The notes under the pieces: model-generated
What the model was told of the DNA's origin: nothing
What the model saw: the letters and a program-made list of their open reading frames with translations, nothing else
The model's database searches: none
Shown here: positions 16,677 through 19,600 of the stretch, piece after piece
Numbering within the stretch: the stretch's first letter is position 1
Layout of the letters: every line of letters starts with the position of its first letter
Position numbers and translations under genes: made by a program
NCBI RefSeq assembly: GCF_033153115.1
Contig: NW_026889832.1
Span: 744,001-808,000, forward strand
Source of the DNA: Saccostrea echinata
Lineage: Eukaryota
Length of the DNA stretch: 64,000 nucleotides
Direction of reading: 5' to 3'

Positions 16677-19600
16677 ACTAGAAATCTGACCAGTCAGCAA
16701 GGGCCCCGCCAAGGGGTAGAAATATAAGGGTGCAGATTAGGGGATGAGAACTTGACTTGATTACAAAAATTTAAAAATATGTAAAGAAGAATAAGCAACA
16801 GCAACTGCTAAATATCCAACAACCTATAAATAGTTTCCTTGTATTTACATACGGCAGTAAAAAACATCATATCTATAATAACTCAATTAAATGTATATTA
16901 AAAGAAGAATGAAGCATGTGTTTTCTAAAATGCCAGCCTTCAGTGAATGCAAATATCACCTAGGCTTGACCTTAACTTCAAAACAAACATCAGTTGCAGA
17001 CAAAGATGTTAATCAAACTTAAAGTGACAGAAAGATAACCCTCTAAAATTTTCTGCAAGCAGCAATATAATCAAACCCAAGGGATTAATTATACTGCTCT
17101 CTCAACCTTTTCTTATAAGTTTACAATAAAATCTTTTTCAGCAATGATAGAATGGGGTTATTATCTGAATACCTGTTAAAATAAATAGTACGCTTGAATT
17201 TACACAAGGCAGAAAAAAAAGAAAGAAAAAATAAAAAAACAAGAGGCCCATGGGCCTTGAATCGCTCTTCTGATAAACTGTACAACCTATCACTTCTATT
17301 TGAAGCCTCGAAGTATCCTGTATATTTAGATAAACCCTTGAAATTCCAATTCACACTCTGAGAACCCAAAATGATTCTAAGCCAATTAGTACCTGAGAGT
17401 TGGTCATGGTGACCTACTTATCACTTGTCATTCTCTGAAGACCCATCAACTAAGTTTGATGATTCTAAGCCAATTAATACCTAAAATATTTTTTAAAATT
17501 ATAACCATAAAATTTTATAAGTAGGTCAAAGTGACCTACTTTTCAATTGTTTTACTCCAAGGACCCACGATGCAAAAGTTTGATGATTCTAAGCCAATTA
17601 GTACCTGTAATATTTAATTAAAGCCATAAATTTTCAAAAGTAGGTCACCGTGACCTACTTTTCAGTTGCTGTACTCCGAGGACCAAAGATACATCGACTG
17701 ACAAAGTTTGATGATTCTAGCCAATAAGTACCCAAAATATTTAATTACAGCCATAAATTTTCAAAAGTAGGTCACGGTGACCTACTTTTCAGTCAACCTA
17801 CTCCGAGGACCAAAGATGCATCAACTGACAAATTTTGACGACTCTAAGCCAAATAATTCCTGAAAATATTAAATACAGCCATAAAATTTCAAAAGTAGGT
17901 CACGGTGACCTACTTTTCAGTTGTTGTACTCCGAGGACCCAAGACGCATCAACTGACAAAGTTTAAAGATTCTAAGCCAATTAGTACCCGAAATATTTGA
18001 CTAAAGCCATAAATTTTCATAAGTAGGTCACCGTGACCTACTTTTCAGTTGTTGTACTCCGAGGACCCATGACGCTTAAACTGACAAAGTTTTATGATTC
18101 TAAGCCAATTAGTACCCGAAATATTTTATTAAAGCCATAAATTTTCTGAAAGTATGTCATGGTGACCTACTTTTTAGTCGACCTACACCGAAAACCCATG
18201 AGGCATCAACTGACAAAGTTTGATGATTCTAAGCCAATTAGTACCCGAAATATTTAATTAAAGCCATAAGTTTTCAAAAGTAGGTCACGGTGACCTACTT
18301 TTTAGTCGACCTACTCTGAAGACCCAAGATGCATCAACTGACAAAGTTTGATGATTCTAAGCCAATTAGTACCTGGAATATTTAATTAAAGCCATAAATT
18401 TTCAAAAGTAGGTCACCGTGACCTACTCTTTAGTCGACCTACTCCGAAGACCCATGAGGCATCAACTGACAAAGTTTGATGATTCTAAGCCAATTAGTAC
18501 CCGGAATATTTAATTAAAGCCATAAATTTTCAAAAGTAGGTCACGGTGACCTCCTTTTTAGTCGACCTACTCTGAAGACCCAAGAGGCATCAACTGACAA
18601 AGTTTGATGATTCTAAGCCAATTAGTACCCGAAATATTTAATTAACGCCATAAATTTTCAAAAGTAGGTCACTGTGACCTACTTTTTAGTCGACCTACTC
18701 CGAAGACCCAAGATGCATCAACTGACAAAGTTTTATGATTCTAAGCCAATTAGTTCCTGAAATATTTAATTATAGTCATATAAATTGAAAAGTAGGTCAC
18801 AGTGACCTACTTTTCAGTTGACCTTTTTTGAGGACCCAAGATGCATCAACTTACAAAGTTTTATGATCATAGGACTTAAAATGTCCAAATTATGCCTCTA
18901 AAACGCTTTGAAATCGAATGCCTGCAAAGTTCAAAAAGTAGGTCACTGTGACCTACTTTTTAATAAATATGTTTTATGGCCCCAAGATGCATCATCTTAC
19001 AAGATTTAATGATTCTAAGCCTCCCCGTATTCGAATTAATGACCTTAATTGTTTTTAAAAAGTTTAGCCATAAAATTCAAAAAGTAGGTCAAGGTGACCT
19101 ACTTTTTAGTTGACGTACTTTGAGGACCCAAGATGCATCAACTGACAAAGTTTGATGATCATAGGCCTTAAATTGTTCAAAATATGCCTCTAAATCATTT
19201 TGAAAAAGAATGGCCACAAAATTTAAAAAGTAGGTCACCGTGACCTACTTTTGAGTAAACATGATATGAGGTCCTTAGATGCACCAACTGACAAGATTTG
19301 ATGGTCCTAGTCCTTATAGTAAGCAAAATATCAACATTTTAATAAAATGTAATTTTTGGTCAACTTTGAAGTGACCTTGAGACCACGCCCTTTGCCCCAG
19401 GGTAAATCCCCGTGCAAATTTTAATCTACAACATATCCTCATCCTTTTGTGTAAGTTTGGTGATAATCTGCCCAGTGGTTCTTGAGAAGAAGATTTTTTA
19501 GCAACCAGTACTTTTGTTTCTATTTTCCTAATTATCTCCCCTTGTTAAAGGGTCACAACCCCAGTTTTAGTACAAAAGGGAGCCCTTGGGCCAAGGATAC

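What the first reader, a model, noticed from the sequence alone, without database searches (positions are those of the whole stretch)
17401..19246. Mobile satellite made of perfect estrogen-response-element (IR3) palindromes inside an intron
Seen: each monomer contains AAAAGT-AGGTCA-nnn-TGACCT-ACTTTT. Perfect AGGTCAnnnTGACCT sites start at 17523, 17642, 17769, 17897, 18025, 18282, 18410, 18538, 18666, 18794, 18940, 19086 and 19232 (13 sites), with two 1-mismatch sites at 17401 and 18154. Half-sites stay fixed while the 3-nt spacer and flanks vary, including in the otherwise diverged 146-bp monomers. Established: this is the consensus ERE, and mollusc ER orthologs bind EREs and are reported to be ligand-independent activators. 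Inference: a rolling-circle element may be spreading phased nuclear-receptor binding arrays that act as enhancers or receptor sinks, here in an intron of a membrane-protein gene.
Basis: partly seen in the sequence, partly recalled or inferred. Interest (0 to 1): 0.8.

Follow-up and report, generated by a model that had tools for sequence, protein, structure and literature searches.

The report
Transposon-borne satellite of ERE-like palindromes
The array is the internal tandem repeat of a young rolling-circle transposon with about 1,100 copies, which has scattered some 12,800 textbook estrogen-receptor sites through this oyster-like genome, but the copies decay like neutral DNA and nothing yet shows that a receptor uses them.

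Summary
There are 13 perfect and 2 one-mismatch AGGTCAnnnTGACCT sites at the stated coordinates, against 0.1 expected by chance.

The array is the central tandem repeat of a 2,507-bp non-autonomous Helentron (HINE) on the minus strand, at 17239-19745. It has precise ends, subterminal inverted repeats and a 3' palindrome. About 1,100 copies, 97-99% identical, lie in unrelated flanks. Genome-wide there are 12,790 perfect sites against a control of 40.

- Spacer variation is CpG decay. Spacers without a CpG are invariant in 31 copies.
- Half-sites are not significantly better kept than the outer arms (0.62% vs 0.81% in young copies, 9.9% vs 11.4% in old ones).
- In young copies the half-sites diverge as fast as the element's non-repeated flanks.
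- A separate 38-bp block of the monomer is kept about as well.

The whole segment holding the array is absent from the other haplotig.

The genome does encode one receptor with an ER-type DNA-reading helix, so binding is plausible but untested. Intron location was not verified.

This scan noted the same family before on another piece of this genome (s1-805426).

The parts
17239..19745 (-). Complete non-autonomous Helentron (HINE), 2,507 bp. Its 5' end is at 19745 and its 3' end at 17239.
   Evidence: Thirty-six fetched copies share exactly these ends and have unrelated flanks. Thirty-one copies are 94-99% identical to it, 30 of them 97% or more. Contigs of three public runs (X1, X9, X10) break into differing flanks after 19745.
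17244..17257 (-). 3' terminal palindrome AGGCCCATGGGCCT, 5 nt from the 3' end
   Evidence: Read directly from the sequence. It is a perfect 14-nt palindrome kept in nearly all copies.
17264..17273 (-). 3' subterminal inverted repeat (GCTCTTCTGA on the + strand), complementary to 19730-19739
   Evidence: It is the exact inverted complement of TCAGAAGAGC at 19730-19739.
17340..19330 (-). Central tandem-repeat array. In + strand order it has about two degenerate monomers at the left edge, roughly eleven units of about 128 bp (119-129 bp), three 146-bp monomers and a partial unit. The order of monomer variants is fixed.
   Evidence: The same spacing pattern and the same monomer-specific diagnostic variants recur in other copies.
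17636..17662 (.). Representative 27-bp palindrome AAAAGTAGGTCAC-N-GTGACCTACTTTT, which is an IR3 ERE-like core plus A/T-rich arms. Equivalent sites start 6 nt before each of the 15 IR3 starts, from 17401 to 19232.
   Evidence: As single-stranded DNA it folds into a 12-bp stem with a 3-nt loop at -10.5 to -10.8 kcal/mol, z -6.1 to -6.7.
19331..19745 (-). Left (5') flanking module of the element
   Evidence: It is 90-99% conserved between copies. The same module ends the consensus of the old family.
19711..19740 (-). 5' subTIR (19727-19740) with its adjacent complementary IR (19711-19723), forming a terminal hairpin
   Evidence: The DNA fold is -13.2 kcal/mol, z -4.15.
19669..19695 (-). Short GT/CA-rich repeat (TGCACACCGCACAC x1.9) at the position where HINEs carry a microsatellite. 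It looks vestigial.
   Evidence: Only one unit is present in the old-family consensus.
24440..25838 (-). Older, decayed relative of the same element: an array at 24440-25500 plus part of the 5' module. It abuts the 3' end of another HINE near 25840.
   Evidence: It is 72-77% identical to 28 other old copies, whose consensus has the same architecture and the same 5' terminus.
16664..20326 (.). Composite insertion that contains the HINE. It is present in this haplotype and absent from the alternative haplotig (contig C40).
   Evidence: C40 runs from window position about 16663 to about 20327, bridged by roughly 60 bp of sequence that does not align to the window. Flanks are 98.7% identical on one side and 90-92% on the other.

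Best explanation
The array is the central tandem repeat of a young, high-copy non-autonomous Helentron (a HINE). This is the kind of element known to carry satellite-like repeats in oysters.

Shown:
- The 2.5-kb element is copied whole, with a fixed order of monomer variants. That is why so many perfect palindromes exist.
- After insertion, the copies decay like neutral DNA.
- The spacer varies because it holds a CpG.

Inferred:
- The 27-bp palindrome and a separate 38-bp block are kept at the level of the replicating element lineage, not by host selection on individual copies.
- The palindrome most likely serves the element itself. It could act as a hairpin or cruciform-forming module on the single-stranded transposition intermediate, or as a hotspot for gain and loss of array units. 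The latter was proposed for the palindrome in each core repeat of the clam element DTC84.
- Its identity with the consensus ERE is real at the sequence level, but may be coincidental.
For: Element structure:
- The ends are precise and shared by 36 copies in unrelated flanks.
- There is a 5' subTIR with a complementary IR, a matching 3' subTIR and a 3' palindrome.
- The 3' end 44-mer has 1,094 genomic matches, on both strands about equally.
- Copies are 97-99% identical.
- Monomer order and diagnostic variants are fixed across copies.

Neutral decay in the young family, non-CpG divergence from consensus:
- Half-sites 0.62%, outer arms 0.81%, non-repeat flanks 0.71%.
- Half-sites against flanks p=0.57. 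Half-sites against outer arms p=0.25.

Spacer:
- The four non-CpG spacers (TGG, AAG, CTG, AGG) show no substitution in 31 copies (one single-base gap).
- CCG and CGG spacers decay to CTG, CCA, CAG and TGG.

Old family:
- Half-sites 9.9% against outer arms 11.4%, p=0.07.
- In the 128-bp monomers, half-sites are 11.9% and 13.9%, outer arms 13-14%, the 38-bp block 14.6% and the 5' module 15.0%.

Other:
- The palindrome folds at -10.5 kcal/mol, z -6.
- The insertion is absent from the other haplotig.
- Precedents: Cg_HINE in oysters (PMC7492417), and DTC84, with a fixed order of core-repeat variants and a conserved palindrome in each repeat (PMC3879986).
Against: - Across all copies, half-sites are somewhat better kept than the outer arms. 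Genome counts give P(half-sites intact | arms intact) of about 0.84, against P(arms intact | half-sites intact) of about 0.54. In 142 old monomers found without using the palindrome, conservation is 95% against 91%.
- Over all monomers of the old family, both parts of the palindrome are 25-35% less diverged than the 5' module. Some constraint or gene conversion is therefore not excluded.
- No compensatory double changes are seen, so nothing shows that pairing rather than sequence is what matters.
- Other HINE arrays in this window carry no long palindrome, so a hairpin is not a general need of such repeats.
- No autonomous partner was sought.
Confidence: 0.62

Rival explanations
1. The palindrome is a working nuclear-receptor site. 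The element recruits the constitutively active mollusc ER through the IR3 core, or a monomeric receptor of the ROR/Rev-erb type (HR3/E75) through AAAGT-AGGTCA. This could serve its own expression or chromatin access. The 1,100 arrays would then act as enhancers or as a receptor sink.
For: - The match to the consensus ERE is perfect, including the spacer CAG at 18794.
- There are 12,790 perfect sites against a control of 40.
- The genome has exactly one receptor with the ER-type P-box CEGCKAFFK. Its first zinc finger is closest to AncSR1 and to the human ER DNA-binding domain. Its second finger is [30 protein letters not shown].
- Mollusc ERs are ligand-independent activators (PMC3886901).
- Half-sites are the best-kept 6-mers of the monomer at family level, 95%.
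- The outer arms fit the A/T-rich extension of monomeric receptor sites (my own knowledge, not tested here).
Against: - There are no binding or expression data.
- In young copies the half-sites decay as fast as non-repeat flanks.
- They are not significantly better kept than the outer arms within either family.
- A 38-bp block with no receptor motif is kept about as well.
- The local copy is a presence/absence polymorphism.
- In a scan of this many windows, a chance match of some repeat palindrome to some famous palindromic motif is expected.
Confidence: 0.25
2. The palindrome has no function at all. It was present in the founder monomer and is simply inherited. Its slightly better preservation comes from gene conversion between monomers and from alignment anchoring.
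For: - The family is very young, at 97-99% identity.
- Private decay rates are equal in the palindrome and the flanks.
- The excess divergence of the rest of the array over the flanks (1.33% against 0.71%) points to monomer shuffling rather than constraint.
- There is no compensatory evolution.
Against: - Column-by-column conservation among old monomers ranges from about 0.5 to 0.99, in discrete blocks.
- The palindrome survives between the 128-bp and 146-bp monomer types, which otherwise differ strongly.
- Both points suggest constraint at the level of the element lineage.
Confidence: 0.13

Closest known systems
Cg_HINE elements of Crassostrea gigas, non-autonomous Helentrons that carry satellite-like central repeats (Vojvoda Zeljko et al. 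2020, PMC7492417)
   Same: - Modular build: a 5' module with a subTIR and a complementary IR, a central array of 3-15 monomers of 128-180 bp, and a 3' module with a subTIR followed by a palindrome.
- Thousands of dispersed copies in both orientations, nested in one another.
- One Cg_HINE cluster (CL6) also has 146-bp monomers.
   Different: - The paper does not describe the monomer sequence here, with its 27-bp palindrome. I could not compare it with the CL6 consensus, because the supplement as held is cut.
- The microsatellite in the 5' module is vestigial here.
- Two monomer lengths sit in one array in a fixed order.
- This genome is 923 Mb and is probably another oyster species.
DTC84, a tandem-repeat-containing pearl-family element of the clam Donax trunculus (Satovic and Plohl 2013, PMC3879986)
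   Same: [quoted passage not shown]
- Each repeat holds a conserved palindrome in a low-variability segment, proposed there as a hotspot for changes in array length.
   Different: - The DTC84 palindrome is 12 nt (TTGTCCGGACAA) and is unrelated in sequence.
- Here it is 27 nt and coincides with a nuclear-receptor consensus site.
Consensus estrogen response element (IR3 of AGGTCA, as in Xenopus vitellogenin A2), and transposon-borne receptor sites in mammals (my own knowledge, not checked here)
   Same: - The sequence is identical to the 15-bp consensus.
- It is spread through the genome by a mobile element, as reported for some mammalian repeats.
   Different: - No binding, occupancy or regulatory data exist for these sites.
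- The carrier is a rolling-circle DNA transposon in a mollusc.
- The sites come 10-15 per array at 128 or 146-bp phasing.

Membership tests
HINE (non-autonomous Helentron) | 5' subterminal inverted repeat with an adjacent complementary IR in the left module | tested here: met
   19727-19740 pairs with 19711-19723. The DNA fold is -13.2 kcal/mol, z -4.15.
HINE (non-autonomous Helentron) | 3' subTIR complementary to the 5' subTIR, followed by a short palindrome near the 3' end | tested here: met
   GCTCTTCTGA at 17264-17273 is the inverted complement of 19730-19739. The palindrome AGGCCCATGGGCCT lies at 17244-17257.
HINE (non-autonomous Helentron) | Short array of satellite-like tandem repeats between the two modules | tested here: met
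   Fifteen monomers at 17340-19330.
HINE (non-autonomous Helentron) | Microsatellite in the left module | tested here: inconclusive
   There is only a 14-bp unit repeated 1.9 times at 19669-19695, and a single unit in the old-family consensus.
HINE (non-autonomous Helentron) | Many dispersed copies with identical ends, unrelated flanks and no target-site duplication, inserted at T-rich sites | tested here: met
   Thirty-six copies were fetched and 1,094 end matches counted. No duplication is visible at the ends. On the element strand, the base after the 3' end is T in most copies. Target preference was not analysed formally.
HINE (non-autonomous Helentron) | An autonomous partner with the same termini, encoding Rep/helicase and an endonuclease | not tested
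   Not sought.
Functional estrogen response element | Two AGGTCA half-sites as an inverted repeat with a 3-nt spacer | tested here: met
   Thirteen perfect sites in the array and 12,790 in the genome.
Functional estrogen response element | A receptor with an ER-type recognition helix encoded by the same genome | tested here: met
   There is a single CEGCKAFFK match, at C9:52908490. Its best solved relatives are AncSR1 (E=4e-19) and the human ER DNA-binding domain.
Functional estrogen response element | Constraint specific to the half-sites, relative to the spacer, outer arms and neutral flanks | tested here: not met
   Spacer change is CpG decay. Half-sites against outer arms give p=0.25 in the young family and p=0.07 in the old one. 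Half-sites against flanks give p=0.57 in the young family. Only family-level counts show a modest excess for the half-sites.
Functional estrogen response element | Receptor binding in vitro or in vivo, and receptor-dependent transcription | not testable with these tools
   This needs EMSA, CUT&RUN and reporter assays.

The most novel reading that the evidence does not exclude
A young Helentron family keeps a composite nuclear-receptor site in every monomer. The site is a perfect IR3 ERE whose arms also form two ROR/Rev-erb-type extended half-sites. It would recruit the constitutively active mollusc ER, or HR3/E75, in the germline for the element's own benefit. As a side effect, about 1,100 arrays of 10-15 high-affinity sites would now dominate the receptor's binding landscape, as enhancers or as a sink.
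Probability: 0.15. Interest if true: 0.8.

Novelty: new member of a known kind. Interest (0 to 1): 0.45.

Why it matters
The targets and role of the ligand-independent mollusc ER are still debated. One transposon family appears to supply nearly all perfect EREs in this genome, about 320 times the control count. Any ERE scan, ER ChIP or reporter study in this species would therefore be dominated by these arrays, whether or not they matter biologically.

If the receptor does bind them, this would be a clear invertebrate case of a DNA transposon distributing receptor sites, and it could be tested directly with one CUT&RUN experiment. If it does not, the case is a caution against reading function into perfect motifs in very young repeats.

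For transposon biology, the family adds a well-defined HINE with a fixed monomer order and a long palindrome in each monomer. That makes it useful for testing whether palindromes drive array turnover.

Tried and rejected
- Compensatory change between palindrome arms. Among 252 distinct 27-mers from all fetched copies there were no double changes in half-site pairs, and only 3 complementary doubles in the outer arms. This gives no signal, and the power was low.
- Long palindromes as a general feature of HINE central repeats. The seven other arrays in the window have only sporadic 6-bp arms. Not supported.
- Elevated mutation at the palindrome apex as a sign of hairpin extrusion. The 18% rate at spacer CpG columns is inflated by CCG/CGG differences between shuffled monomers. 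At unambiguous monomers it is about 8-10%, against 6-7% for other CpGs. Non-CpG spacers are invariant. No clear signal.
- Comparison with the published CL6 146-bp monomer of C. gigas. The supplement as held is cut after CL1.
- Species identity. Organism names of the sequencing runs are coded. An oyster is inferred only from Cg170-like repeats in the window and their likeness to published CL1 arrays.
- Transcription or intron status from public runs. Only short repeat contigs were laid, which is not informative beyond confirming the end at 19745.
- A plain satellite expanding in place, or segmental duplication. Rejected because flanks are unrelated and ends are precise. The pair L010/L012 shares flanks and was counted once.
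- Singleton counts in the old family. They are the same in all classes, but the measure is saturated at that divergence, so it was not used.
- Literature search for an ERE link to Helitrons or bivalve repeats. Nothing relevant turned up.

Full report
**Observation.**
It also finds the one-mismatch sites at 17401 and 18154. The window holds 20 matches, against 0.10 expected from shuffles.

Tandem Repeats Finder reports a 128-bp array at 17575-18867 (10.1 copies) and a 146-bp array at 18788-19331 (3.7 copies).

In most monomers the palindrome extends to 13-bp arms around a single central base: AAAAGTAGGTCAC-N-GTGACCTACTTTT.

A second, more decayed array of the same repeat lies at about 24440-25500.

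**What carries the array.**
A monomer dimer used as a genome query returned many near-identical places. Alignment of the fetched loci to the window showed that similarity starts at 17237-17239 and stops at 19745-19746 in copy after copy.

Thirty-six copies share these exact ends and have unrelated flanks. One pair with identical flanks was treated as a duplicate.

On the minus strand the element reads as follows:
- 5'-TTTTTAGCTCTTCTGAGCC-AAA-GGCTCAAAGAGCT, a subTIR with its complementary IR. As DNA it folds at -13.2 kcal/mol, z -4.15.
- A 5' module of about 400 bp.
- The tandem array.
- The 3' subTIR TCAGAAGAGC.
- The palindrome AGGCCCATGGGCCT, ending in CTTGT-3'.

This is the published anatomy of HINEs, the non-autonomous Helentrons that carry satellite-like repeats in Crassostrea gigas (PMC7492417).

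The 3' end 44-mer has 1,094 genomic matches at up to 3 mismatches, split evenly between strands. Thirty-one aligned copies are 94-99% identical to the window copy, 30 of them 97% or more.

The order of monomer variants is the same in all copies. It runs from a degenerate TGGTCA unit through an AAG-spacer unit, the ATGTCA unit and the CTG and AGG units of the 146-bp type. Only the number of middle monomers changes. The clam element DTC84 behaves the same way, with a conserved palindrome in each core repeat (PMC3879986).

**Scale.**
The 923-Mb assembly has 12,790 perfect IR3 sites, against 40 for the reversed control. It has 6,856 perfect 27-mers, against 0.

About 1,100 copies with roughly 9-18 perfect sites each account for essentially all of these.

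The assembly contains uncollapsed haplotigs. Contig C40 is 100% identical to the window over 24640-25480. Counts may therefore be inflated relative to a haploid genome.

**Is receptor recognition visible in the sequence?**

*The spacer.*
The four monomers whose spacer has no CpG (TGG, AAG, CTG, AGG) show no substitution in 31 copies (one single-base gap). CCG and CGG spacers decay to CTG, CCA, CAG and TGG. Spacer variability is therefore CpG hypermutability, not relaxed constraint next to constrained half-sites.

*Decay after insertion, young family.*

| Class (non-CpG) | Divergence from consensus |
|---|---|
| Half-sites | 0.62% |
| Outer arms | 0.81% |
| Non-repeat modules (flanks) | 0.71% |
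| Rest of the array | 1.33% |

- Half-sites against outer arms: p=0.25.
- Half-sites against flanks: p=0.57.
- The excess in the rest of the array probably reflects monomer shuffling.
- Power is limited. A reduction of one third in the half-sites cannot be excluded.

*Decay in the old family.*
This is 28 copies at about 75% pairwise identity, whose consensus has the same architecture and the same 5' terminus.

| Class | Divergence |
|---|---|
| Half-sites | 9.9% |
| Outer arms | 11.4% |
| 5' module | 15.0% |

Half-sites against outer arms give p=0.07.

Within the six 128-bp monomers the values are:

| Segment | Divergence |
|---|---|
| Left half-site | 11.9% |
| Right half-site | 13.9% |
| Outer arms | 13-14% |
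| Separate 38-bp block (AAGATGCATCAACTGACAAAGTTTGATGATTCTAAGCC) | 14.6% |

*Family-level conservation.*
In 142 old monomers found with a profile that excludes the palindrome, conservation is 95% for half-sites, 91% for outer arms and about 90% for the 38-bp block. Variable columns fall to about 0.5.

Genome counts point the same way:
- P(half-sites intact | arms intact) is about 0.84.
- P(arms intact | half-sites intact) is about 0.54.

*Reading these results.*
The core is a little better kept than the arms across lineages. Within copies, though, the whole 27-bp palindrome behaves as one unit, and another block with no receptor motif is kept about as well.

The data lie close to that outcome.

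That criterion is not clean, however. AAAGT-AGGTCA also fits the extended half-site of monomeric receptors of the ROR/Rev-erb type. This is my own knowledge, not tested here. The earlier scan note s1-805426 raised the same point.

*No compensatory changes.*
No compensatory double substitutions were found between the arms. Nothing therefore shows that pairing, rather than sequence, is what is kept.

*Hairpin potential.*
The palindrome would form a stable DNA hairpin of -10.5 kcal/mol, z -6. However, other HINE arrays in this window have no comparable palindrome.

**Is there a receptor to bind it?**
The genome has 88 exon-level matches to the nuclear-receptor zinc finger family. It has exactly one match to a back-translated ER-type P-box, CEGCKAFFK.

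That exon reads [33 protein letters not shown]. Its closest solved relatives are AncSR1 (E=4e-19) and the human ER DNA-binding domain.

The next exon reads [30 protein letters not shown].

Mollusc ERs are ligand-independent activators (PMC3886901).

Binding in vitro is therefore plausible. No data bear on binding in vivo or on any regulatory effect.

**Local context.**
The alternative haplotig lacks window positions 16664-20326. This is a 3.66-kb composite insertion that contains the HINE. This particular array is therefore a presence/absence polymorphism.

The surrounding 12-29 kb is a nest of other HINE arrays. No ORF of 90 aa or more lies between 13.6 and 27.3 kb.

Public-run contigs laid on the region were short repeat pieces. 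They confirmed the element end at 19745 but nothing about transcription. Intron status is not established.

**Literature and earlier notes.**
Searches found no paper linking EREs to Helitrons or to bivalve repeats.

An earlier follow-up in this scan (s1-805426) described the same family on another piece of this genome. It reached the same open question.

**Verdict.**

The sequence-based argument for receptor recognition does not hold. An enhancer or sink role remains an untested hypothesis, with a plausible trans-factor available.

I give about 0.6 to a selfish-element feature that is neutral in its copies. I give about 0.25 to real receptor use and about 0.13 to pure hitch-hiking.

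Noticed in passing
window 16664-20326, versus L072 (G000:C40:724000-733999): The alternative haplotig lacks a 3.66-kb composite insertion that contains the HINE. In the window the insert is bounded by ...CATCATATAA|CTAGAAATC on the left and ...GGGGCCCTAATTAA|TCAATCAATCA on the right. Another locus, L011 on C10, shares the same composite over at least 16901-20032 at 95% identity. 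The outer element may therefore move together with its nested HINE.
   Followed up: partly
window 24640-25480, versus G000:C40:723172-724012: This stretch is 100% identical on a second contig, so the assembly keeps both haplotypes in places. Genome-wide repeat counts may be inflated.
   Followed up: partly
window 25840-26485: Another HINE abuts the old array. Its 3' end reads CAAGAGGCCCAGGGGCCACATCGCTCACCTGAGC. It has Cg170-like monomers containing ACCCCCGGGGG, an (ACAG/ACGG)n microsatellite at 26389-26434, and a terminal hairpin AGCTCACTTGAGCCTTCGGCTCAGGTGAGCT.
   Followed up: no
window 27661-29109, 58633-59392 and 60977-61567: Further satellite-like arrays of 157-168 bp, related to the published Cg170/CL1 repeats of C. 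gigas. This is the basis for calling the genome oyster-like.
   Followed up: no
G000:C1, e.g. 3517487, 5685630 and 7975554: A different dispersed repeat shares the AAAAGT...ACTTTT frame but has an unrelated, non-palindromic middle (AAAAGTTATGRCCAAGGTTAAACTTTT).
   Followed up: no
G000:C9:52908433-52908534 and 52911786-52911917 (L073, L074): Two exons of an estrogen-receptor orthologue's DNA-binding domain. This is the only ER-type P-box in the genome.
   Followed up: partly
window 37491-37618 and 39919-40043: Two arrays of a 16-bp unit in opposite orientation, about 2.3 kb apart (GGTCCACTAGTCCGAA and TCGGACTAGTGAACCT). They look like tandem-subrepeat terminal inverted repeats of another transposon.
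   Followed up: no
window 41533-44196: Many 15-bp units (TTATTACATTTTGCG and its complement) in both orientations. This looks like a foldback-type repeat cluster.
   Followed up: no
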